From assembly GCF_006345805.1 (NCBI RefSeq), contig NC_042999.1:36456001-36520000 (forward strand): a stretch of DNA of 64,000 nucleotides. The letters run 5' to 3'. Below, piece after piece: positions 6,554 to 63,833 of the stretch; position 1 is the first letter of the stretch, and the number at the start of each line of letters is the position of its first letter. A program made the position numbers and the translations under genes. Below the pieces are notes generated by a model, which was given only the letters and a program-made list of their open reading frames with translations, had not been told where the DNA came from and searched no databases. The DNA is from Octopus sinensis (taxonomy: Eukaryota).

Positions 6554-7118
6554 GCACAATTAGTAAAGGTCTTAATACTGAATACTTTACCAAATGATAG
6601 ATCAGAAACTGTAGCTAATTATTATAAAGAAATACTTGAATAAGAAGTTGAAAGAAATATAAGAGATGCTTTGCCCCACACAGAAACAGCATGAACTTCT
6701 TAAAGCAGTTGCAAGCTCTTGTCCTGGTAATGACTAAAGTCATCACAATACTGGTAACTTTTCCATATCAGCAGCAGGTATCTCAGGATAAGTAACAAGT
6801 GCTTTGCGCCTTAGCCTATACGCTTTAACTAAGTGGGGCAGTGAAAACTGAATTAGCCTTAGCCTGTGAAGGGGTTCCGTTTGTGGTTTCTCATCAACCA
6901 CAACATTCTTGGCAGAGGTGTGTAGCTTAGTGGTTAGAGTGTTGCACTCATTGTTGTAATACTGTGGTTTCAATTCCTAGATCTGATTACGTGTTATATA
7001 CTTGTGCAAAACACTTCATTTCATATTGCTCCAGCTCACTCAGCTGACAAAAGTGACTAATCTTTCAACAGATTGACTCTTGTTTAGTGGGGGGGGGGTA
7101 AGCAATATATATATAGAG

Positions 7119-7262
7119 AATACCAAACGAGTTCCCTATGGATACCGTATTTATTACAACAAGTGGCTTGTAAACGTATCTAACGAGCAAAAGCGAGTCA
7201 GATACGTTTACAAGCCACGAGTTGTAATAAATACGGTATCCATAGGGAATGAGTTTGGTATT
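7119..7262 (+). other. 144-nt near-perfect palindrome/hairpin with tandem G.A mismatches; probable non-autonomous hairpin element
   Basis: The 72+72 nt arms pair base for base around the loop gc-aaaa-gc (7187-7194). The mismatches fall at cgag/tgag/caag motifs. Confidence 0.9.
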
Positions 7263-8099
7263 TTATTTATTACACACGAATAAACGACCATATTTTATTA
7301 ACCCAATAACTAAATTCTTCACATCGTGTTGAAGCGTGCATGAATACAGCTTGATTTCACGTCAGTGATGTCACAATGTGTAACTGTAAAAGATGTCATG
7401 CCGCAGGAAGATAGTCCGACTTTATAGCGCTAAGTTTTCAAGTGAAATGACTAATAACTGATGACTGTTTAACATTTTGTTAACATTCAAGTTCACGTTC
7501 AAGAAATACATAACACAGATTGAATCTTCAATAACTTTAATAATACTCAAAAGTAGTGCCGTCACCATGACCTCGGGTCATCACCATGGATTGACCAATC
7601 AGAAGCAGCGCTTGCAGTATCTGACATATGTTAGATACCAAAAATATCTCAAAGTGTTCTCACTCACATGTGTGTAATAAATATATATACCACAGAATCT
7701 GGGAAACTTCGAACTGGTTTCAGCTATCATAGCTGCCTCCTTGCCTAGCTAAAGAAAAATGTGAATTATCTGGAGCAGACAGTGATTGATTGCATATTTT
7801 AAAAATAATTTTAATGTTTTTATACATTGTTATTTTAACCTTTAGAATTTTTGTGATTTGTTCTTCAATAAATAATTTAACAAAGTACACTCTGTGTATG
7901 TAAACTGAGATTCTTTCCTGTTATAGTAACATATTAGAAAAATATGGTCACCCTATTGACATCACAATCATCGTCAACACAAATGCAACTAATAGCAAAC
8001 AATACCTCATTTGTTTATGATCATTTTTAAAATTAAATATTACACTCTGTACTCAACTAAAGCATTATTCTGAAATATATGTATATTGAGTTCTAACAC

Positions 8100-13634: not shown

Positions 13635-14467
13635 TTATAGGTTGTGTGTCTGTCTACTCCGATTTAGATTCCTAACTACTCCCACATTTTGCGATGCAGT
13701 TTAACCAAAACCGGGTATCTTATAGTCGTGATTCATATCGAGCCCTTCTGGGTATTAGCGCGCGTCTACGATGAGTCTATGATTTTACAAATAATTTACC
13801 ATCATTTTTTTCCATTTTAATGCATATTTTTTAAAATAAACGGAAGTAACTCTCAAACTTCACACCAATATGCGTGCTCATATGCGACGTAATATCACAT
13901 CAGCAGCATTTCCTCACACCCTCCTTGCACTTGGTGAAGGCAAAATACCAGGGGATGAAAATGGTAATATTGCCATCGATTCCATTTGTACCATTGTTAA
14001 GACGCCTTCTGATCTCAGAGATGCAGTGTTCCCAGATCTACAAGCTAATTATCAGAATATGGATTGGATTGGCAAAAAGGCTATACTGGCCCCGAGGAAT
14101 AAAACTGTTCACCATATTAATGATGAAATGCTAAAACTCATTCCTGGGGAAGTCTATGTATATCAGTCTATCGATACAACTCCTGACCCAGAGGACGTCA
14201 TCAACTATCCAATAGAGGTACTCAATTCCTTTGAGCACCCCGGACTACCACCACACTTTCTCAAACTTAAAGTTGGTGCCCCTATAATGCTCATCAGAAA
14301 TTTGGTTCTCCCAAAACAATGCAATGGCACACGTTTGATCGTTAAGTCCTTATCTCCCACCGTAAGCTTATATCAATATTTGCCTGAATAATCATCATAA
14401 TTCAGTGCAATCATTAACAGTACTTTCAAGCAATTCAGCCCCGAGCAACGCCGGGCAATTCTGCTAG
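13635..14467 (+). mobile_element. Second Helitron, head-to-tail, 5'-truncated, carrying a helicase fragment
   Basis: Shares the cgatttagattcctaact...gagtcta body with 13128-13633; ends ccccgagcaacgccgggcaattctgCTAG|t. Confidence 0.85.
13870..14391 (+). pseudogene. Helitron RepHel Pif1-family helicase fragment (173 aa open frame)
   Basis: Motifs (T)NMR, AILAPRN, YQSIDT, YPIEVLNS, GLPPHFLKLKVGAPIMLIRNL and CNGTRL are typical of Helitron Pif1 helicase C-terminal halves. Confidence 0.9.
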
Positions 14468-37770: not shown

Positions 37771-38603
37771 GTATGTATATATACATATATATATATATAC
37801 ATATATATATTAATATAATAATATATATATATATGCATATATACATATGTATATGTACATACTTACATCTATACATATATATATGCATATGTGGGCACAG
37901 GATGTCACGAAAGGTGTACAAAAAAAATACAAAGTACAAGTACATGGAACATGAACTATTCTTTCAAACAATGAAAGACACAAATGGGAAACAAAACAAG
38001 CAACATAAAGAACGACCCTTCATCCGTTGTTGGCTCCTTTTCTAGTCTTGTATTTCAAGCATTTAACAACACTATACGCTTTCGATAAAACAGTTGCTCC
38101 TGCAAGGCAAATTAAATAAAATTTGGGATTTTGCGGAGGGTCAAAATTGGTAACACAAACAGGACAGTGAAAACAAACAGGAAGGGCTGCTAAACCTAAA
38201 CAAGGTCGTGGTGGCGAATGTGTAAATCAAGCTTGGACAGGAGACATACAAAAAGCACATCTTCCTTGCTCCAGCTACAACGGAGAGAAAGAAAGAAACA
38301 CAAGTTTGGAGAAGAAAGAAAGATGGCCGATGGTTATGTGGGAGCCACGTGAGCAATGGAGGAGGAGTGAGGGAGAGAGAGTGACAGAGTAATAGGAGAG
38401 AATAGTGGGAGAAGAGGAGGAAAAAGAATAAGAGAGAGAACGAGAAAAACAAAAGAGTAAAATGATCAAATAGTGTGCGCATCATATTATAAATATATGT
38501 ATATTCTTGTAATTGTCATTTTAGTAAATAAATAAATAAGCTGACATTATATAATGCCTAAAAGTTGATGAACCACTTATTGATCCCCTCCATTTTCTTA
38601 TTG

Positions 38604-39348: not shown

Positions 39349-40247
39349 AGTTGTGAAGTAAGCTTCTTAACACACAACCACACCAGTGTCCATATCCATT
39401 ATATTATATTTCATTCATTCTATGTCTCATACTGTTAGATATCTTACAATGTCTATCCTCTTGTGTTGTTCTCCATTATACTTTGCCTATTATTATATCT
39501 TGTGTCTTCTGTCATAATTACTTACATCCATTCACCTTTGTTTTGCTTCGACGTTAGGAAGAAGACATTCACAGTGCATCTCATTTTATGCATTTCCTCA
39601 TATCATTTTCAGATATGTGACTTTCAACATGAGTATGTGAATGTGTCCTTGTGCATGTATGTGTAGGAGGATATATATGTGACTGAGCATGTATATGTTC
39701 ATATACATATGTGTGAGTGCACTATATGTACGACTGCGTACGTATATGTGTATGTATGTGTGTGTGTGTTTCTATGTAATTTTTTCAAAATGAATGAAAC
39801 CTTAACCCTACAGGCAGTTTACCTACACAACTGCATTTCTTCGTATAAAAATTTCTAGATGATATTGTATTAAAAATATATGGATTTGTCTGTCTGTATG
39901 TATGTATGAGGTCTGATCAGTAAGTATCCGGACTGGTACTATAAAAACAAAACTACAACATGTACCAATTTGGCATTTAATCTTCTTCAAAGTAGTCCCC
40001 TTTGGAAGCCACACACTTAATCCAGCATTGTTTCCATTGATGGAAGCATTCCTGGAACTTGTTTTCTGGGATAATCAGCAGGGGCCTTGTCACATTCACT
40101 TTAATTTCCTTGGCATCCTGAAATCTTCTTCCTTTCAAGCAGGATTTGATTTTCGGAAAGAGGAAAAAGTTGTAAGGAGAAAGATTTGGGGAATACTGAA
40201 ATGTTCACTATAAAATTATTTTAGCATTTTCTATTTTTTACTTGTTT

Positions 40248-41140: not shown

Positions 41141-42098
41141 AATAATTATAATTGTGTACAGTGCTCAGGTGCACTACAACTCATCTAAAGTGTATATATA
41201 ATCAGGTGTAGTTTCGACGGATTTCGGAAAGCATGAGGGCCTTAAAGGATGCAGTGTCATGGCAGTCAACAACTGATGCAGGCAGTTTATTCCACGCTTC
41301 AGCACCCTGAGCGTGAAAAATGTTTCCGAAAGTCATGGGAGCTGTATGTTTTCTGACTTTGTAGGCATGTCCACGTGTGTTAGACACATGGAGATCAAAA
41401 AGGTGTTCAGTGTTGTTGTTGGTGAGGTGGTTGATAACTTTGTGGGTGTTTACCAAGTCCGTCGCCAAACGCCGGAGCTTCAGTGAATCCATGCCCAGGG
41501 AAACAAGGCGCTCAGAATATGGTAGGTGTCTGATGGAGGTATGCGTTTGGTTGCACGTCTCTGGACAGATTCCAGGAGGTCAATGTTCTGTGCAAGATAG
41601 GGGTTCCAAACTGATGATGCGAATTCCAAGTGTGGTCGTACCATAGCTGTATACAGTTTTAAATAGATGGCTGGAGAGCGGCTAACAAAAGACCTGCTGA
41701 GTGATGCCAAGACACCCTCGGCCTTCCTGACAATCTTAGAGATATGCTTTGACCAACGCAAATCACTGCTGACAGTGATGCCTAGGTCACGCTCGCAAGA
41801 GGATTTCTTGATATCAGTGTTGTGGAGGGAGTATGTGAACGCAGGGTTTTTTCTCCCAAAATGCATGGTGGTACACTTGTCACAGCCAGTTTCAGTTGCC
41901 AGTCTGTGATCCATTGCTGCATTGTGTCTAGGTCTGATTGCAGGAAAGAGTTGTAGACATCAGGATCTGCCTCTTGATTTCAAGGTACAGGCTTGATGTC
42001 GTCTGCATATTTCAATACTGTGGCATTCCTTAAATTGGCATCTATGTCGTTAATGTATGCCACAAACAAGAGGGGACCAAGGACAGATCCCTGTGGTA
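41124..42098 (-). mobile_element. 5'-truncated CR1-clade LINE (RT C-terminal half, (TTA)n tail)
   Basis: Reverse strand: VPQGSVLGPLLFVAYIND, KYADD, ERDLGITVSSDLRWSKHI, VRPHLEFASSVWNP, LESVQRRATK, TRGH, WNKLPASVV. A few frameshifts. Confidence 0.92.
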
Positions 42099-42471: not shown

Positions 42472-43342
42472 ATACATATATATATGTACATATATATATA
42501 TATATATATGTATGTATATATACATATATATATATACATATATATATTAATATAAATAATATATATATATATATGCATATATACATATGTATATGTACAT
42601 ACTTACATCTATACATATATATATGCATATGTGGGCACAGGATGTCACGAAAGGTGTACAAAAAAAATACAAGTACAAGTACATGGAACATGAATTATTC
42701 TTTCAAACAATGAAAGACACAAATGGGAAACAAAACAAGCAACATAAAGAACGACCCTTCATCCGTTGTTGGCTCCTTTTCTAGTCTTGTATTTCAAGCA
42801 TTTAACAACACTATACGCTTTCGATAAAACAGTTGCTCCTGCAAGGCAAATTAAATAAAATTTGGGATTTTGCGGAGGGTCAAAATTGGTAACACAAACA
42901 GGACAGTGAAAACAAACAGGAAGGGCTGCTAAGCCTAAACAAGGTCGTGGTGGCGAATGTGTAAATCAAGCTTGGACAGGAGACATACAAAAAGCACATC
43001 TTCCTTGCTCCAGCTACAACGGAGAGAAAGAAAGAAACACAAGTTAGGAGAAGAAAGAAAGATGGCCGATGGTTATGTGGGAGCCACGTGAGCAATGGAG
43101 GAGGAGTGAGAGAGAGAGAGTGACAGAGTAATAGGAGAGAATAGTGGGAGAAGAGGAGGAAAAAGAATAAGAGAGAGAACGAGAAAAACAAAAGAGTAAA
43201 ATGATCAAATAGTGTGCGCATCATATTATAAATATATGTATATTCTTGTAATTGTCATTTTAGTAAATAAATAAATAAGCTGACATTATATAATGCCTAA
43301 AAGTTGATGAACCACTTATTGATCCCCTCCATTTTCTTATTG

Positions 43343-44645: not shown

Positions 44646-45915
44646 TGAGGTCTGATCAGTAAGTATCCGGACTGGTACTATAAAAACAAAACTACAACAT
44701 GTACCAATTTGGCATTTAATCTTCTTCAAAGTAGTCCCCTTTGGAAGCCACACACTTAATCCAGCATTGTTTCCATTGATGGAAGCATTCCTGGAACTTG
44801 TTTTCTGGGATAATCAGCAGGGGCCTTGTCACATTCACTTTAATTTCCTTGGCATCCTGAAATCTTCTTCCTTTCAAGCAGGATTTGATTTTCGGAAAGA
44901 GGAAAAAGTTGTAAGGAGAAAGATTTGGGGAATACAGCGGCGCTCAAACACAGGGAATGCTGTGCCTAACCAAAAACTGCTGCTGAATGGGCAGGTGTGT
45001 TGTCATAGTGCAATTGCCACTCACCGGACATACACAATTGTGGCCTTTCCAACGGATAGCATCCCACAAAATGTTACGGTAGTACTCCTTGTTTATTGTC
45101 TGACCATGTGGAGCATACCTATGATGAACAATCCCCTTGTCATCAAAGAAAACGGTCAGCAGTGTCTTCACATTCCTTCAACTCATTCATGCTTTCTTGG
45201 AGAGGTTGGGGTCTTCCACTGCGAACCCTGAGCCTTTGTTTCAGGTCATAGCCATAGAACCCTGATTCATTACCCATTATGACCGTTTTCAAAAAGTTTT
45301 CATCGTTCTCAACACAATCGAGAAGATTTTGAGCAACTGAAACCCAAGTGTCTTTTTGGTCAGATTAAAGCAGCTTTGGCACAAACATGGCAGACATGCA
45401 TCTCATACCAAAATCTTCAGTGATAATGGACTGAACTGAACCATAACTAATCTTCACACCTTCTGATCACTCATGGATGGTGATTTAAAAATTTCCTCTC
45501 ACAGCTGCATGGACATCTGCTATGTTTTTCTCAGTTCTGCTGGTTGCAGGTCTCCCAGAATGTTGGCCATCTCAGAAACTTCTGAACCACTCGTACACTT
45601 CTGTGAAGTTCATGCACTCCTCCCCATACACTTTCTGCAATTTTGCATAGGCATCTGAGCAGATATTGCCAAGCTTTTGGCAAAATTTGATGAAGATTCT
45701 CTGCTCAACTTTCTCTGTCATGGTCAATGCGATGATCACATGCTACATATATTCCTTCCAAGCACAGCTGTTAACAGCATAAGTGAGAAAGAACATTAAA
45801 ACTTAGTGCCCATGCACAGCAGAGTTCAAGGTCAATCTGTGCCAAATGGTTTTACTCTGTGTGCTCTAGCTTTGTTACTATGGCAACAGTCCAGATACTT
45901 ATTGATCAGACCATG
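44646..45915 (-). mobile_element. Full-length degenerate mariner (~1.27 kb); truncated copy at ~39905-40196
   Basis: TIR tgaggtctgatcagtaagtatccggactg / cagtccagatacttattgatcagaccatg, TA at the left end. Transposase remnant KTLLTVFFDDKGIVHH...GQTINKEYY. Confidence 0.9.
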
Positions 45916-50651: not shown

Positions 50652-51839
50652 GTTTTTAAATAAATGGTTAATAGTTGAAATATGTTATTTTTGAAAAAAT
50701 TAAAAACCTACAATAAATATAAAATTTGTAATTTTTTTCAAATGATAATGAAATACTAGCACTTAATCCAGCCATATCCAGTCTAAATTTTCTACCTCTT
50801 TTATATTCAAATCAACCACATCCAGCCTTTCACACCTAACCTACAATGTCATTCTAAAATAAATAATTACATCATCGAAATCACAAAGCTACTTGATTCA
50901 AAATATTGTGGGTAAATAAGCATCACATTTGACAGAGTGATTTGAATGTTAAAGGATTAAATTCATTTTATTACCATTAAATAAATTTCTAAAAATGTTT
51001 AAAAATTGATAATGTAATGAAAACAATTTTTGAACAATAATTTATAATAATAAATAAGCATTTAAAAAAAAGTTTTGTCCAAAGGTGACTTGTTTTCTAC
51101 CATTAATTTAATAAATGCCACAAAAAATATCAGTGTCCATTAATTGCACATTTATTCTCTCTTATTTTATTTCATAAAAGCAAAAATATTTTGTGAGTTC
51201 AATAAAGCAACCATTTATAATCATATAATTTTTATTTTTGATATGATAACAAAAAAATCTCTTGACACCCAGACAATTAATAACTTCTAAAAAAATGGTT
51301 ACTTTTTGAGCACAAAAATTAAATCCCGTAGCAATTTTTTTAAAAAAATCTGTTGTATTACCTTTTTATTGTATTTATTCAATGAGATCCTTGTGACTGA
51401 TGCAGTATCACAAGTTATTCAATATCAAGGGTCTATGGTTGTTAGAGACGAATGAAGATTACCTCTACTTACAATTTCTAAGCAATTGTGAGCTTTTGAT
51501 TGCAGGAAAGACATTCAGCTAGAACTTGACTCAATTAGGTAAGTAAGGAATGCAATGATATATAATTTAATATCTTGCCAAAGCAATGGAAAGTGGAGGC
51601 ATGGGACTTAGTAGATAGGGTGTTGGACTAAGATTGTAGTTTTGATCCCAAGACCAGGCGATGTGTTGTGTTCTTGAGCAAAACACTTCATTTCACATTG
51701 CTCAAGTCTGCTCGGCTGGTAGGGAATTTATATGCTATGGAAACCGAGAAACTGACCCTTATGAGTTGGCATGGCTCAAGAAGGTAACTTTACCCTACTT
51801 TAAAGCAATGGGGATTTCATGACAATTTCACTTCTTGTC

Positions 51840-60515: not shown

Positions 60516-60861
60516 TATATAAATTAGAAAAAAAACACCTTTTATCAATTCAATAATGAAAAATTAAATTATACCATTTAGAAAAATTACATATTATAGA
60601 AAGATTAAATATAAGATAAAGCATATAACGATGATTAAGTAATGTGCAAAATAATAAATAAAACATATATATTTGGTAGAATAATTTACAATGATCGTTA
60701 TTCTACCAAGTATATACGTTTTATTTATTATTTTGCACATTATTTAATCATCGTTATATGCTTTATCTTATATTTAATCTTTCTATAAATATATAATTTT
60801 TCTAAATGGTATAATTTAATTTTTCATTATTGACTTGCTAAAAGGTGTTTTTTTTCTAATT

Positions 60862-63066: not shown

Positions 63067-63833
63067 CAGAGTGGGGAAGAGAGGACGGACGTTTTTGAAA
63101 TGGCTATTACTCAGCCCCAGGGGGAGGGACATATGTGCAACAGTTACCATTGAGTCTGTGGTGTCTTTGCATTTTTTTTACTTTTTTACTTTTCAGGTGA
63201 AGCCATGGCGCTGTGAACGATAGAGCATCATGTGTTTGCCTATGATAGTTATGTGAAGAATAACGAGTCTGTCACAGTAGTTCAGCATGAGTTTTGGTGC
63301 TACTTCAACATTCACCGAAATCAGGCTGTTCCCACTCATAACACAATCTTACGTTGGGTAAATGCTTTCATATACAAGGTACGCTAATGAATAGGAGACC
63401 AGTGAGGGTGCCATGAACAGTACAGACCCCAGAAAATGTGGAACACATCAGACAAGCTTTGATATGGAGTGTAAATCACTCTGCTTGGAGGTATTTCACT
63501 GAACTTAGCATTGGTAATCAATCAGTAAGGTGTATTTTGCATGAAGATCTGCTTTTCCACCTATACAAATTGGTCACTGGGCAACAGTTGAAATCATGGG
63601 ACTCTGCACAGAACAATGTGCAGAGGTCAATTTCCAAGAACAGAGCAGAGGTCAATTTCCAAGAACACCTTCAGAAATGCATCAAGGAAAACGGACACCA
63701 GATGGTGGATATTGTTTTCCACGCTTAATTCTGACTAATGCTAATTCAATACAAACACATTGATGTCAATAAAATTTGTTTGCAGTTAAAATTTATGATT
63801 TTGTAACGTTTTCAAAAACGTCTGTCCTCTCTG
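63067..63833 (+). mobile_element. Internally deleted Tc1/mariner-superfamily (DUF4817-HTH type) element
   Basis: TA|cagagtggggaagagaggacggacgtttttgaaa vs tttcaaaaacgtctgtcctctct. Translation YDSYVKNNESVTVVQHEF...TILRWVNAF...TPENVEHIRQ...LHEDLLFHLYK, fused to the C-terminus LQKCIKENGHQMVDIVF. Confidence 0.8.

What the first reader, a model, noticed from the sequence alone, without database searches (positions are those of the whole stretch)
7119..7262. Strand-specific 144-nt hairpin whose mismatches are tandem sheared G.A pairs
Seen: 72-nt arms pair exactly except at three evenly spaced spots, one lone A.C and one G.T. The three spots are 5'-GA/5'-GA oppositions: cgag7128/tgag7250, caag7160/cgag7218 and cgag7184/cgag7194. 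The loop is gc-AAAA-gc. Each departure from CGAG or GCGAAAGC (caag, tgag, gcaaaagc) looks like CpG decay, implying an ancestor with CGAG at all six sites and a GCGAAAGC loop. Established: Py-GA-Pu tandem sheared G.A pairs and GCGAAAGC/GCGAAGC mini-hairpins are unusually stable in single-stranded DNA. The minus strand would have TC/TC mismatches, so only the + strand folds well. Random decay of a MITE palindrome would not give this pattern. Inference: a non-coding element selected to fold as ssDNA (or RNA), for example the substrate of an HUH endonuclease or tyrosine recombinase (REP-like or Crypton-like MITE), or a hairpin RNA gene.
Basis: partly seen in the sequence, partly recalled or inferred. 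Interest (0 to 1): 0.82.

Follow-up and report, generated by a model that had tools for sequence, protein, structure and literature searches.

The report
Transposon hairpin with conserved G·A blocks
The 144-base hairpin is real and forms one end of a small mobile DNA element found in at least two animal genomes; its odd G·A mismatches are inherited and conserved, not random decay, which suggests the element is recognised as a folded single strand.

Summary
The mismatch pattern is not random decay (p about 2e-7).

Translating the frame that stays open through the hairpin found 7 relatives, from 5 separate insertions, in ENA assembly ERZ25071447. Between the two lineages, 13 stem pairs changed on both sides and stayed paired. 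The CGAG and loop columns differ only by three CpG transitions in the window copy.

The hairpin is not a stand-alone element. It is the left module of a 566-bp non-coding element (window 7116-7681):
- The element is bounded by TA on each side.
- It contains a core with perfect 12-bp inverted repeats and a small covarying palindrome near its right end.
- An uninterrupted 31-nt satellite supplies an empty site, showing that hairpin plus core inserted as one unit and added one TA.

This looks like a Tc1/mariner-type MITE. Insertion after ATA with no duplication cannot be formally excluded. No HUH or tyrosine-recombinase gene lies nearby.

Both strands are predicted to fold, so "only the + strand folds" is overstated. 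One sublineage flipped site 1 to Watson-Crick and still spread. My best reading is a transposon end module selected to fold as a single strand. That function is inferred, not shown.

The parts
7114..7115 (.). Left flanking TA (target-site duplication, or the end of an ATA target)
   Evidence: Every copy has ATA immediately before GAG/GAA. An empty site in the 31-nt satellite of L030-L032 shows that one TA was gained.
7116..7681 (+). Whole non-autonomous element (566 bp): GAG, hairpin, T, TA, then the core
   Evidence: It aligns end to end with the ERZ25071447 copies. Homology among copies stops at these two boundaries.
7119..7262 (+). The 144-nt hairpin module (72-nt arms). Pairing extends two more positions: A7117-T7264 and G7118.T7263.
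   Evidence: Conserved, with 13 compensatory pairs, in 7 relatives.
7128..7131 (+). CGAG block, site 1, left arm (cgag)
   Evidence: In relatives it reads CGAG (L028, L029, L030-32), CTCG (L033) or CTTG (L027).
7250..7253 (+). CGAG block, site 1, right arm (tgag; CpG decay of CGAG)
   Evidence: Relatives read CGAG (CAAG in L029).
7160..7163 (+). CGAG block, site 2, left arm (caag; CpG decay of CGAG)
   Evidence: All relatives read CGAG or TGAG.
7218..7221 (+). CGAG block, site 2, right arm (cgag)
7184..7197 (+). Apex CGAG-CAAAAG-CGAG: the site 3 G.A/G.A block plus loop GCAAAAGC, a decayed GCGAAAGC
   Evidence: L029 and L033 read CGAGCGAAAGCGAG. L027 and L028 carry altered versions. The apex is deleted in L030-32.
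7264..7265 (.). Internal TA between the hairpin module and the core
   Evidence: Conserved in all 7 copies where this junction is intact (in L028 it follows the tandem array and was not examined). ERZ copies read GTATTC TA TTTCTTACACAC.
7266..7277 (+). Left inverted repeat of the core, TTTATTACACAC
   Evidence: A perfect inverted repeat with 7670-7681 (I4). The one difference from the ERZ copies is compensated (A-T to C-G).
7357..7373 (.). Conserved CRE-like block in the core (TCACGTCA, then TGATGTCA)
   Evidence: Aligns with GTCTGACGTCAGC in the ERZ copies. Function not tested.
7571..7603 (.). Conserved core block CTCGGGTCATCAC...GACCAATCAGAAGC (contains CCAAT at 7595-7599)
   Evidence: The best-conserved core block between the window and the ERZ copies.
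7617..7638 (+). Right subterminal palindrome GTATCTGAC-ATAT-GTTAGATAC. It reuses the words of the hairpin's inner stem.
   Evidence: The homologous palindrome in the ERZ copies has two compensated pairs and a mismatch at the same position.
7670..7681 (+). Right inverted repeat and right end of the element, GTGTGTAATAAA
7682..7683 (.). Right flanking TA

Best explanation
SHOWN. The hairpin is the left-end module of a 566-bp non-coding mobile element (window 7116-7681). The element belongs to an interspersed family present in at least two divergent animal genomes. The family's master sequence carried three 5'-CGAG-3'/5'-CGAG-3' oppositions and a GCGAAAGC apex. All of these lie on the same strand and in a fixed orientation relative to the rest of the element. 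The stems have changed at 13 pairs by double, pair-preserving substitutions. Hairpin and core insert together and gain one TA, as Tc1/mariner-type (Stowaway-like) MITEs do. The window copy is an immobile relic decaying by CpG transitions.

INFERRED. The asymmetry is kept by selection on the masters because the + strand is used in single-stranded form. That form is most probably DNA exposed during mobilisation or replication of the element; an RNA is the other candidate. In that form the strand folds into one continuous rod. The three CGAG blocks form tandem sheared G.A pairs, and the apex forms an ultra-stable mini-hairpin that nucleates folding. The 14-nt repeat just after the hairpin can pair with the right end, which would bring both element ends to the foot of the rod. 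The rod with its three identical AAC-GA-G/C-GA-GTT modules would then act as a strand- and orientation-specific landmark for the mobilising protein or a host factor.
For: Family and consensus:
- Searches found the relatives.
- The consensus apex reads AAC GA GC GAAA GC GA GTT, and CGAG occurs at all six sites.

Covariation:
- 64 pairs, 96% of cells paired, 13 pairs changed on both sides.
- 0 of 500 shuffles reach this; slid controls pair only 32-44%.
- RNAalifold independently predicts the same rod.

Sequence conservation of the motif columns:
- Of 29 CGAG and loop columns, 0 differ apart from three CpG transitions in the window copy.
- Of 115 stem columns, 29 differ (75% identity).

Specificity to the hairpin:
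- There are 4-5 CGAG in each hairpin and none in any core, apart from the tandem array in L028.
- The outer flank of each block is the same 3 bp (AAC/GTT).

Structural fit:
- The blocks sit in exactly the context documented to give stable sheared G:A 'CGAG blocks' (PMC10085684).
- The apex is the documented mini-hairpin. Its GCAAAAGC variant loses the special behaviour (PMC13037366).

Strand bias:
- The + strand is more stable than the - strand in every copy.
- About 9 G.T events against 3 A.C events on the + strand (one-sided p = 0.07).

Insertion unit:
- Common boundaries across copies.
- Empty site ...TATATACATACCGTATAGC... against filled ...ACA TA [GAG...AAGAAA] TA CC....
- No solo hairpin or solo core in about 185 kb held.

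Not coding:
- The open frame starts in non-homologous flank and ends at different places in different copies.
- No Pfam domain.
Against: - Only two lineages were compared (one window copy against one other genome), so all 13 compensatory changes lie on a single branch.
- Gene conversion between the arms of an inverted repeat can mimic covariation.
- Nearest-neighbour models predict that both strands fold strongly. The GA-over-TC advantage is only about 2 kcal/mol per site with RNA parameters and about 0.4 with the DNA set used.
- Site 1 became Watson-Crick (CTCG/CGAG) in the L033/L027 sublineage, which still inserted at two independent loci. That block is therefore dispensable for spread.
- The L030-32 copy lacks the whole apex.
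- Cut-and-paste Tc1/mariner transposition has no known single-stranded stage.
- Only 3 nt of the element lie upstream of the hairpin, so there is no evident promoter for a + sense RNA.
- No expression, melting or binding data exist.
Confidence: 0.5

Rival explanations
1. Double-stranded DNA reading. The six ACGAGT-like hexamers are direct subterminal repeats bound, in duplex DNA, by the transposase or an accessory protein to mark the left end of the element. The palindrome is only a historical product of two end-like segments joined tail to tail, as in Made1. The arms are kept alike by gene conversion.
For: - The element looks like a TA-inserting inverted-repeat transposon.
- All six hexamers have one orientation relative to the whole element.
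- The hairpin arms share words with the element's right end: AAATC..CTTCAACGG and TAC(T)ACAC.
- The GA-to-TC flip at site 1 in L033 is what arm-to-arm conversion would produce.
Against: - The mid stem (alignment columns 14-36) has 9 compensated pairs and little sequence conservation. That is the opposite of a protein-binding duplex site.
- Conversion tracts would erase the GA/GA blocks, yet the blocks outlast 13 compensations.
- It would be a coincidence for a duplex motif to be the optimal sheared-G.A context three times and for the apex to be GCGAAAGC.
- At most one reverse-oriented partial match (ACTCGG/CCTCGG) occurs at the right end.
Confidence: 0.17
2. RNA reading. The module acts as a transcribed long hairpin, either as a source of small RNAs or as an editing or Dicer substrate. 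In that case CGAG/CGAG are RNA tandem sheared G.A pairs, C(GAAA)G is a GNRA tetraloop, and G.U wobbles are tolerated.
For: - With RNA parameters the + strand is favoured by 2-19 kcal/mol in every copy.
- There is an excess of G.T over A.C on the + strand.
- The ERZ consensus holds two G.T pairs and no A.C.
- Palindromic MITEs are known sources of miRNA hairpins (Made1/miR-548, PMC1784062).
Against: - No Rfam family reaches its threshold. The best scores are 25 bits against a cut-off of 44, and 47 against 245.
- A 70-bp stem with a 4-nt loop is unlike a Drosha substrate.
- Only 3 nt of the element precede the hairpin, so sense transcription would depend on the insertion site.
- The TTTT after the hairpin in the window copy is not conserved in the relatives.
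- A DNA transposon gains nothing obvious from such an RNA.
Confidence: 0.13
3. The element is mobilised as single-stranded DNA by an HUH endonuclease (like IS200/IS605, REP/RAYT or Helitron) or by a tyrosine recombinase (like Crypton), and the hairpin is the enzyme's substrate.
For: - There are hairpins near both ends on one strand, each with conserved irregularities.
- All copies are preceded by ATA and end in ...AAATA. An insertion 3' of ATA without duplication gives the same sequences as a TA duplication.
- The 14-nt repeat would bring the two ends together in a single strand (I4).
- The apex is the motif of ssDNA-phage priming sites.
Against: - The core has perfect 12-bp inverted repeats, each abutting TA, which is the hallmark of Tc1/mariner-type elements.
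- The termini are not 5'-TC/CTRR-3' in either orientation.
- No HUH or tyrosine-recombinase domain lies in the window's first 22 kb. The Pif1 2B relic at 13840-14388 lies outside the element.
- From general knowledge: Helitrons are the only HUH transposons known in animals, and their 3' hairpins are about 20 nt.
Confidence: 0.1
4. Neutral oddity. The GA/GA oppositions were a chance feature of one founder copy, inherited by all descendants, with no function.
For: - Individual copies clearly decay neutrally: CpG transitions fall inside the motifs.
- One block was lost without stopping spread (L027, L033).
- Only two lineages were sampled.
Against: - Three identical AAC-GA-G/C-GA-GTT modules plus GCGAAAGC in a founder is itself very improbable.
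- The modules are unchanged across a divergence that altered 25% of stem columns (0.77^29 is about 5e-4).
Confidence: 0.07

Closest known systems
Stowaway-like / Tc1-mariner-derived MITEs, including the palindromic Made1 (source of miR-548)
   Same: - Short and non-coding.
- Interspersed, and flanked by TA.
- Has inverted repeats at the ends of the core.
- The hairpin module resembles two end segments joined back to back, as in Made1 (PMC1784062, PMC3814204).
   Different: - The outermost left end matches the right end only weakly (TAC[T]ACAC).
- The palindrome sits at one end of a larger asymmetric unit.
- It carries three conserved purine-purine blocks and a GCGAAAGC apex on one strand.
- No autonomous partner or transposase was identified.
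IS200/IS605 (IS608) ends and REP/RAYT elements
   Same: - Imperfect subterminal hairpins at both ends, read on one strand.
- Conserved irregularities in the stems.
- A constant short sequence to the left of the element.
   Different: - Those are prokaryotic, with 20-35-nt hairpins, no terminal inverted repeats and a Y1 HUH transposase.
- Here the hairpin is 144 nt and 12-bp inverted repeats abut TA.
- No HUH gene was found.
GCGAAAGC mini-hairpins at ssDNA-phage (G4) complementary-strand origins
   Same: The family consensus apex is exactly GCGAAAGC, sitting on a stem.
   Different: - The phage motif is a primase/SSB-related signal on a viral single strand.
- Here it caps a 70-bp rod in an animal transposon.
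- The window copy has the inactive-type variant GCAAAAGC.
'CGAG blocks' of the human AUTS2 promoter (Novotny, Plavec and Kocman 2023)
   Same: 5'-CGAG-3' opposed to 5'-CGAG-3', giving G:C pairs plus tandem sheared G:A pairs in a DNA hairpin.
   Different: - There the blocks are consecutive repeats in a promoter.
- Here three isolated blocks are spaced 32 and 24 nt apart within Watson-Crick stems of a mobile element.
Parvovirus terminal hairpins with a mismatched 'bubble' (for example the minute virus of mice left end; from general knowledge, not tested)
   Same: A hairpin of about 120-150 nt whose purine-purine bubble makes the two orientations functionally different.
   Different: - No NS1 or VP remnants nearby.
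- The hairpin is linear, not Y- or T-shaped.
- The element has a transposon-like insertion signature and is multi-copy.

Membership tests
Tc1/mariner-type (Stowaway-like) MITE | Multi-copy and interspersed, with unrelated flanks | tested here: met
   8 copies at 6 independent sites: the window, L027, L028, L029, L033, and the L030-32 group counted as one. Homology ends at common boundaries.
Tc1/mariner-type (Stowaway-like) MITE | TA target-site duplication | tested here: met
   The intact satellite unit reads ...ACATACC.... The filled site reads ...ACA TA [element] TA CC.... TA lies on both sides in 5 of 6 independent insertions. Caveat: an invariant TA cannot be told apart from an ATA target with no duplication.
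Tc1/mariner-type (Stowaway-like) MITE | Terminal inverted repeats at the two ends of the mobile unit | tested here: inconclusive
   There is a perfect 12-bp repeat between 7266-7277 and 7670-7681, each next to TA. But the mobile unit starts 150 nt further left, at GAGAATAC, which matches the right end only at TAC(T)ACAC.
Tc1/mariner-type (Stowaway-like) MITE | Small and non-coding | tested here: met
   Copies are 464-689 bp; L028 is 1256 bp because of a tandem array. No Pfam domain was found, and the open frames are incidental.
Tc1/mariner-type (Stowaway-like) MITE | Autonomous partner with the same ends and a DDE transposase | not testable with these tools
   No eukaryotic genome collection can be searched by DNA. 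None was seen in the about 250 kb held.
HUH-mobilised elements (IS200/IS605, REP/RAYT, Helitron) | Insertion without target duplication at a fixed short target | tested here: inconclusive
   The same data fit insertion 3' of ATA with an element ending in ...AAATA.
HUH-mobilised elements (IS200/IS605, REP/RAYT, Helitron) | Associated HUH (Rep / Y1 / Y2) gene | tested here: not met
   A Pfam scan of 117 ORFs across window 1-22000 found only a Pif1 2B fragment at 13840-14388, outside the element.
HUH-mobilised elements (IS200/IS605, REP/RAYT, Helitron) | Helitron ends 5'-TC ... CTRR-3', with a short hairpin about 10 nt from the 3' end | tested here: not met
   The ends are GAGAATAC... and ...GTAAGAAA on the + strand, or TTTCTTAC... 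and ...GTATTCTC on the - strand.
Crypton / tyrosine-recombinase elements | Tyrosine recombinase gene and no terminal inverted repeats | tested here: not met
   No such domain was found. Inverted repeats are present.
Known RNA families (pre-miRNA, other Rfam) | Score at or above a family's gathering threshold | tested here: not met
   No hits at gathering threshold in the window, L029 or L033. The best sub-threshold scores are mir-7386 at 25.4 against 44 and MIR2646 at 46.7 against 245.
Known RNA families (pre-miRNA, other Rfam) | Expressed and processed RNA | not testable with these tools
   No expression data are available.
CGAG-block / mini-hairpin DNA structural motifs | 5'-CGAG-3' opposite 5'-CGAG-3' within a stem, and GCGNNAGC at the apex | tested here: met
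   The family consensus meets both. The window copy keeps 4 of 6 CGAG, and its apex has decayed to GCAAAAGC.
CGAG-block / mini-hairpin DNA structural motifs | Physical formation of sheared G.A pairs, and extra stability of the + strand | not testable with these tools
   The nearest-neighbour parameter sets used give almost no credit in DNA (-64.3 against -63.1 kcal/mol for GA/GA against TC/TC). Melting or NMR experiments are needed.
Endogenous parvovirus-like terminal hairpin | Adjacent NS1 or capsid gene remnants | tested here: not met
   None in window 1-22000. No match in viral contigs or phage records.

The most novel reading that the evidence does not exclude
An animal transposon family that inserts at TA but is recognised, or even moved, as a folded single strand. 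The + strand would form a 70-bp rod punctuated by three sheared-G.A CGAG blocks and capped by a GCGAAAGC mini-hairpin. The element's two ends would be brought to the foot of the rod by a 14-nt panhandle. This would be a eukaryotic counterpart of the structured ssDNA signals of IS200/IS605, parvoviral termini and phage G4 origins, possibly served by an unrecognised strand-specific nuclease.
Probability: 0.2. Interest if true: 0.85.

Novelty: new variant of a known kind. Interest (0 to 1): 0.62.

Why it matters
Palindromic MITEs are usually treated as symmetric duplex sites for a transposase, whose mismatches are noise. In this family the 'mismatches' are the best-conserved part of the palindrome. 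They also match two DNA motifs known from physical chemistry: CGAG blocks and the GCGAAAGC mini-hairpin.

If the single-strand reading holds, some eukaryotic DNA transposons carry strand-specific structural signals. That bears on how MITEs amplify and how their ends are told apart. It would also give a natural, repeated test case for sheared G.A pairs in vivo.

If it does not hold, the family is still a clean example of arm co-evolution with a protected asymmetry that needs another explanation.

As a practical point, translating an incidental open frame through a repeat proved a usable way to find relatives of non-coding DNA in protein-only collections.

Tried and rejected
Searches that found nothing:
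1. A second copy in the window. Arm 17-mer and 24-mer searches with up to 3 mismatches and a low-stringency BLAST found none.
2. Exact or degenerate DNA patterns in public collections:
   - Viral contigs gave 22 single-arm chance hits and later nothing.
   - Prokaryote genomes gave nothing.
   - Metagenome contigs gave nothing.
   - A back-translated search gave one chance match, L024, which is not a hairpin.
3. A word-indexed protein search with the hairpin ORF found nothing. The exhaustive HMMER search was what succeeded.
4. Phage and plasmid BLAST found no match, so vector or phage contamination is unlikely.
5. Full-text searches for the arm sequences and for the ENA accession found nothing.

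Ideas tested and dropped:
6. A 'degenerate second copy' at 7565-7700. The whole-region alignment was not significant although the k-mer excess was. It turned out to be the right subterminal module of the same element.
7. Nested insertions with a GA target duplication at each layer. This would need three unrelated palindromic families with the same centre, and all layers are colinear in every copy.
8. A Pol III read-through transcript from the upstream tRNA-like SINE ending at the TTTT after the hairpin. Neither that TTTT nor a fixed-distance upstream repeat is conserved in the relatives.
9. A link to the Pif1 (Helitron-like) relic at 13.8 kb. It lies outside the element, and three cephalopod Pif1 loci (L023, L025, L026) hold no hairpin.
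10. A coding reading of the open frame. The ORFs start in non-homologous flank and stop at different points.

Not achieved:
11. Naming the organism behind ERZ25071447. The called 'genes' there are satellite artefacts and their clusters carry no names.
12. A window-wide count of tandem self-opposed dinucleotides in hairpins. It was swamped by microsatellites and was uninformative.
Full report
**1. The observation**

Window 7119-7262 is a 144-nt inverted repeat with 72-nt arms.
- Tandem G.A/A.G at 7129-7130 opposite 7251-7252.
- G7131.T7250.
- A.A/A.G at 7161-7162 opposite 7219-7220.
- A7182.C7199.
- G.A/A.G at 7185-7186 opposite 7195-7196.
- An AAAA loop closed by GC/GC.

The tetramers on the + strand are cgag/tgag, caag/cgag and cgag/cgag. 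The spacing is 32 and 24 nt, so 'evenly spaced' is only approximate.

The fold is far beyond chance, at -62.5 kcal/mol against -11.7 +/- 2.6 for shuffles. So is the kind of mismatch. Three adjacent mismatch pairs among 8 of 70 positions has p = 0.009. Six purine-purine oppositions have p = 2e-5. The joint probability is about 2e-7.

The window provides its own control. A second complex palindrome at 60594-60788 (91-nt arms) has three mismatches, all of transition type.

The window has 36% G+C and a CpG observed/expected ratio of 0.44. The hairpin has 1.54.

**2. What does not hold as stated**

Both strands are predicted to fold. The energies are -62.5 against -62.4 kcal/mol with DNA parameters and -102.2 against -100.2 with RNA parameters.

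Replacing all three blocks in silico gives the following:

| Variant | RNA parameters (kcal/mol) | DNA parameters (kcal/mol) |
|---|---|---|
| GA/GA | -105.1 | -64.3 |
| TC/TC | -98.8 | -63.1 |
| Watson-Crick | -123.7 | -82.6 |

The DNA parameter set clearly does not credit sheared G.A pairs, whose stability is documented experimentally (PMC10085684, PMC13037366). Even so, 'only the + strand folds' is an overstatement. The difference is local, not global.

**3. Context in the window**

The arms occur nowhere else in the 64 kb. Rfam gives nothing at gathering thresholds and only weak generic hairpin hits below them.

A Pfam scan of 117 ORFs covering window 1-22000 finds only a Pif1 2B-domain fragment at 13840-14388. 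Its best relatives are Octopus sinensis and O. bimaculoides proteins at 52-57% identity. The window also shares SINE-like repeats of about 180 nt with an O. bimaculoides locus at 75-80% identity. The host is therefore an octopod-like animal.

A tRNA-derived SINE head lies just upstream.

**4. Finding relatives**

DNA pattern scans of the viral, prokaryotic and metagenome collections, phage and plasmid BLAST, and full-text searches all failed.

One reading frame happens to stay open through the hairpin. Its translation found nothing in the word-indexed protein search. It did find one 46-residue 'protein', P0121, in the exhaustive search. A two-sequence profile then found four more.

All five are spurious ORF calls on contigs of one ENA assembly, ERZ25071447. 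Fetching the DNA gave seven hairpin copies at five independent sites:
- L027, L028, L029 and L033.
- L030, L031 and L032, which are one insertion inside a duplicated satellite block.

That genome shares no other repeat with the window. Its organism could not be named.

**5.

The alignment consensus is:

AATACTACAC GA GTACCCGTTGGAGACGATTTATCTTACAAC GA GTGGTTTCTAAAACGTATCTAAC GA GC GAAA GC GA GTTAGATACGTTTGGAAACCAC GA GTTGTAAGATAAATCGTCTTCAACGGGTAC GA GTGTAGTATT

It has CGAG at all six sites and a GCGAAAGC apex, which is the predicted ancestor. The window's caag, tgag and gcAaaagc are CpG transitions private to that copy.

On a seven-sequence alignment, 64 stem pairs are 96% paired. Thirteen pairs changed on both sides and stayed paired. 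None of 500 shuffles reaches this, and slid controls pair only 32-44%. RNAalifold predicts the same rod on its own.

Between the window copy and the ERZ consensus, 29 of 115 stem columns differ. None of the 29 CGAG and loop columns differs apart from those three CpG transitions. So sequence is conserved in the blocks and pairing is conserved in the stems. Each block also has the same outer context, AAC-GA-G / C-GA-GTT.

There are exceptions:
- L033 has CTCG opposite CGAG at site 1, which is fully Watson-Crick.
- Its relative L027 has CTTG, a CpG decay of CTCG. These two sit at unrelated loci, so a master without the site-1 block still spread.
- L027 has a degraded apex.
- L030-32 lack the apex altogether.

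**6. The hairpin is part of a larger element**

Homology among copies starts a few bases left of the hairpin. It ends 460-690 nt to the right at a common ...GGGTGTGTAAGAAA. The window aligns end to end with these copies.

The architecture in all eight copies, always in the same orientation, is:

TA | GAG + hairpin + C/T | TA | TTTCTTACACAC ... core ... GTGTGTAAGAAA | TA

In the window the coordinates are:
- TA at 7114-7115.
- Element at 7116-7681.
- Internal TA at 7264-7265.
- Perfect 12-bp inverted repeats at 7266-7277 and 7670-7681.
- TA at 7682-7683.

The apparent 'second copy' I first suspected at about 7565-7700 is the element's right subterminal module. Its palindrome (7617-7638 in the window; ATCTCC[C]AC...GT[T]GGAGAT in ERZ) also shows two compensated pairs and a mismatch at a fixed position.

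CGAG occurs 4-5 times in each hairpin and never in a core. No solo hairpin or solo core occurs in the about 185 kb held.

**7. How it inserted**

The L030-32 copy lies in a 31-nt satellite. Dozens of intact units read ...CTGTTACTATATACATACCGTATAGC.... The interrupted unit reads ...CTGTTACTATATACA TA [GAG...AAGAAA] TA CC(A/T)TATAGC....

Hairpin plus core is therefore one insertion unit, and one TA is gained. Four other independent insertions also have TA on both sides, often inside (TA)n tracts.

This is the signature of Tc1/mariner-type (Stowaway-like) MITEs. Because the TA never varies, the same sequences would also arise from insertion 3' of ATA with an element ending in ...AAATA and no duplication. 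I cannot exclude that. The perfect 12-bp repeats abutting TA favour the cut-and-paste reading.

**8. What it most likely is and does**

Shown:
- A decaying copy of a non-autonomous mobile element.
- The family's left module is a palindrome with a protected, strand-fixed asymmetry.

Inferred:
- The asymmetry is maintained because the + strand is used in single-stranded form.
- Two independent pieces of structural knowledge fit the consensus exactly. CGAG/CGAG is the context that gives stable tandem sheared G:A 'CGAG blocks'. GCGAAAGC is the extraordinarily stable mini-hairpin (Tm 76.5 C) known from ssDNA-phage origins, and its GCAAAAGC variant behaves normally.
- A duplex-binding motif would have no reason to coincide with both.
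- The mid stem varies freely in sequence but not in pairing.
- Wobble-type mismatches favour the + strand: about 9 G.T against 3 A.C events (one-sided p = 0.07), and the + strand is more stable in every copy.
- The 14-nt repeat following the hairpin can pair with the right end. In a single strand this would bring both ends to the foot of the rod.

Against this reading:
- All compensations lie on one branch.
- Arm-to-arm conversion exists, as the L033 flip shows.
- Site 1 is dispensable for spread.
- Cut-and-paste transposition has no known single-stranded stage.
- There is no evident promoter for a + sense RNA.

I therefore give the full statement, including function, about 0.5. The descriptive part I hold at about 0.85-0.9.

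**9. Comparison with known systems**

The element works most like a Stowaway or Made1-type MITE in how it inserts. Its end structures most resemble the structured ends of IS200/IS605, parvoviral termini or phage G4 origins.

Membership results:
- Tc1/mariner-type MITEs: supported for TA gain, copy number, size and lack of coding. Inconclusive for the outer inverted repeats. Untestable for the autonomous partner.
- HUH, Crypton, Rfam and parvoviral families: each fails at least one defining feature tested here.

I found no description of a transposon family with conserved CGAG blocks. Dfam and Repbase were not available.

**10. Verdict**

This is a real, non-random, conserved feature. It is a new variant of a known kind: a MITE-like element with an unusual structured end module. 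The proposed enzymology is unsupported, though not excluded.

Noticed in passing
window 60561-60825: A second complex, AT-rich palindrome of about 265 nt (core arms 91 nt, 13-nt loop). Its only stem mismatches are G.T, A.C and T.G. It is probably an unrelated foldback or MITE. I used it as the local control for random decay.
   Followed up: partly
window 13840-14388 (+): A relic of a Pif1-type helicase (Pfam Pif1_2B_dom, E = 7e-15), as encoded by Helitrons. The closest proteins are from Octopus sinensis and O. bimaculoides at 52-57% identity. No Rep or other helicase domains were detected next to it.
   Followed up: partly
window 6916-7045, continuing to a G10 run at 7090-7099: A tRNA-derived SINE head with a perfect A box (TAGCTTAGTGG) lies directly upstream of the element. 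A 70%-identical copy sits at 51607-51706. The element seems to have landed in the (TA)n tract that follows this SINE.
   Followed up: partly
L028 10344-10956: In one relative, the 25-nt stretch between two CGAG motifs of the right arm (CGAGTTAGATACGTTTTAGAAACCG) has expanded into a tandem array of about 24 units. The likely cause is slippage between the direct CGAGTT repeats.
   Followed up: partly
L030, L031, L032 (for example L032 1600-4100): A 31-nt satellite (CCTGTTACTATATACATACCGTATAGCACTA) hosts one element insertion. The insertion and its surroundings occur three times at 89-94% identity, so the block is a segmental or higher-order duplication.
   Followed up: partly
window 7357-7373 and 7571-7603: The core of the element keeps CRE-like (TCACGTCA, TGATGTCA) and CCAAT-box-like (GACCAATCAG) blocks that are also conserved in the ERZ copies. 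This may be a promoter carried by the element.
   Followed up: no
window about 37.5-40.2 kb and 42.3-45.2 kb: Identical ORF translations recur about 4.74 kb apart (38144-38515 and 42883-43254; 39917-40210 and 44656-45228). This indicates a recent local duplication inside a region rich in TA and CA microsatellites.
   Followed up: no
window 63417-63725 (+) and 41205-41959 (-): Short ORFs whose sequences look like a mariner-type transposase N-terminus and the C-terminus of a LINE reverse transcriptase. Neither reached Pfam significance. Neither has ends resembling the hairpin element.
   Followed up: no
P0121-P0125 (ENA ERZ25071447): Public protein collections hold 'proteins' of 39-99 residues that are just translations of this repeat. 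Other long 'genes' on the same contigs are translations of satellites, some called with alternative genetic codes.
   Followed up: yes
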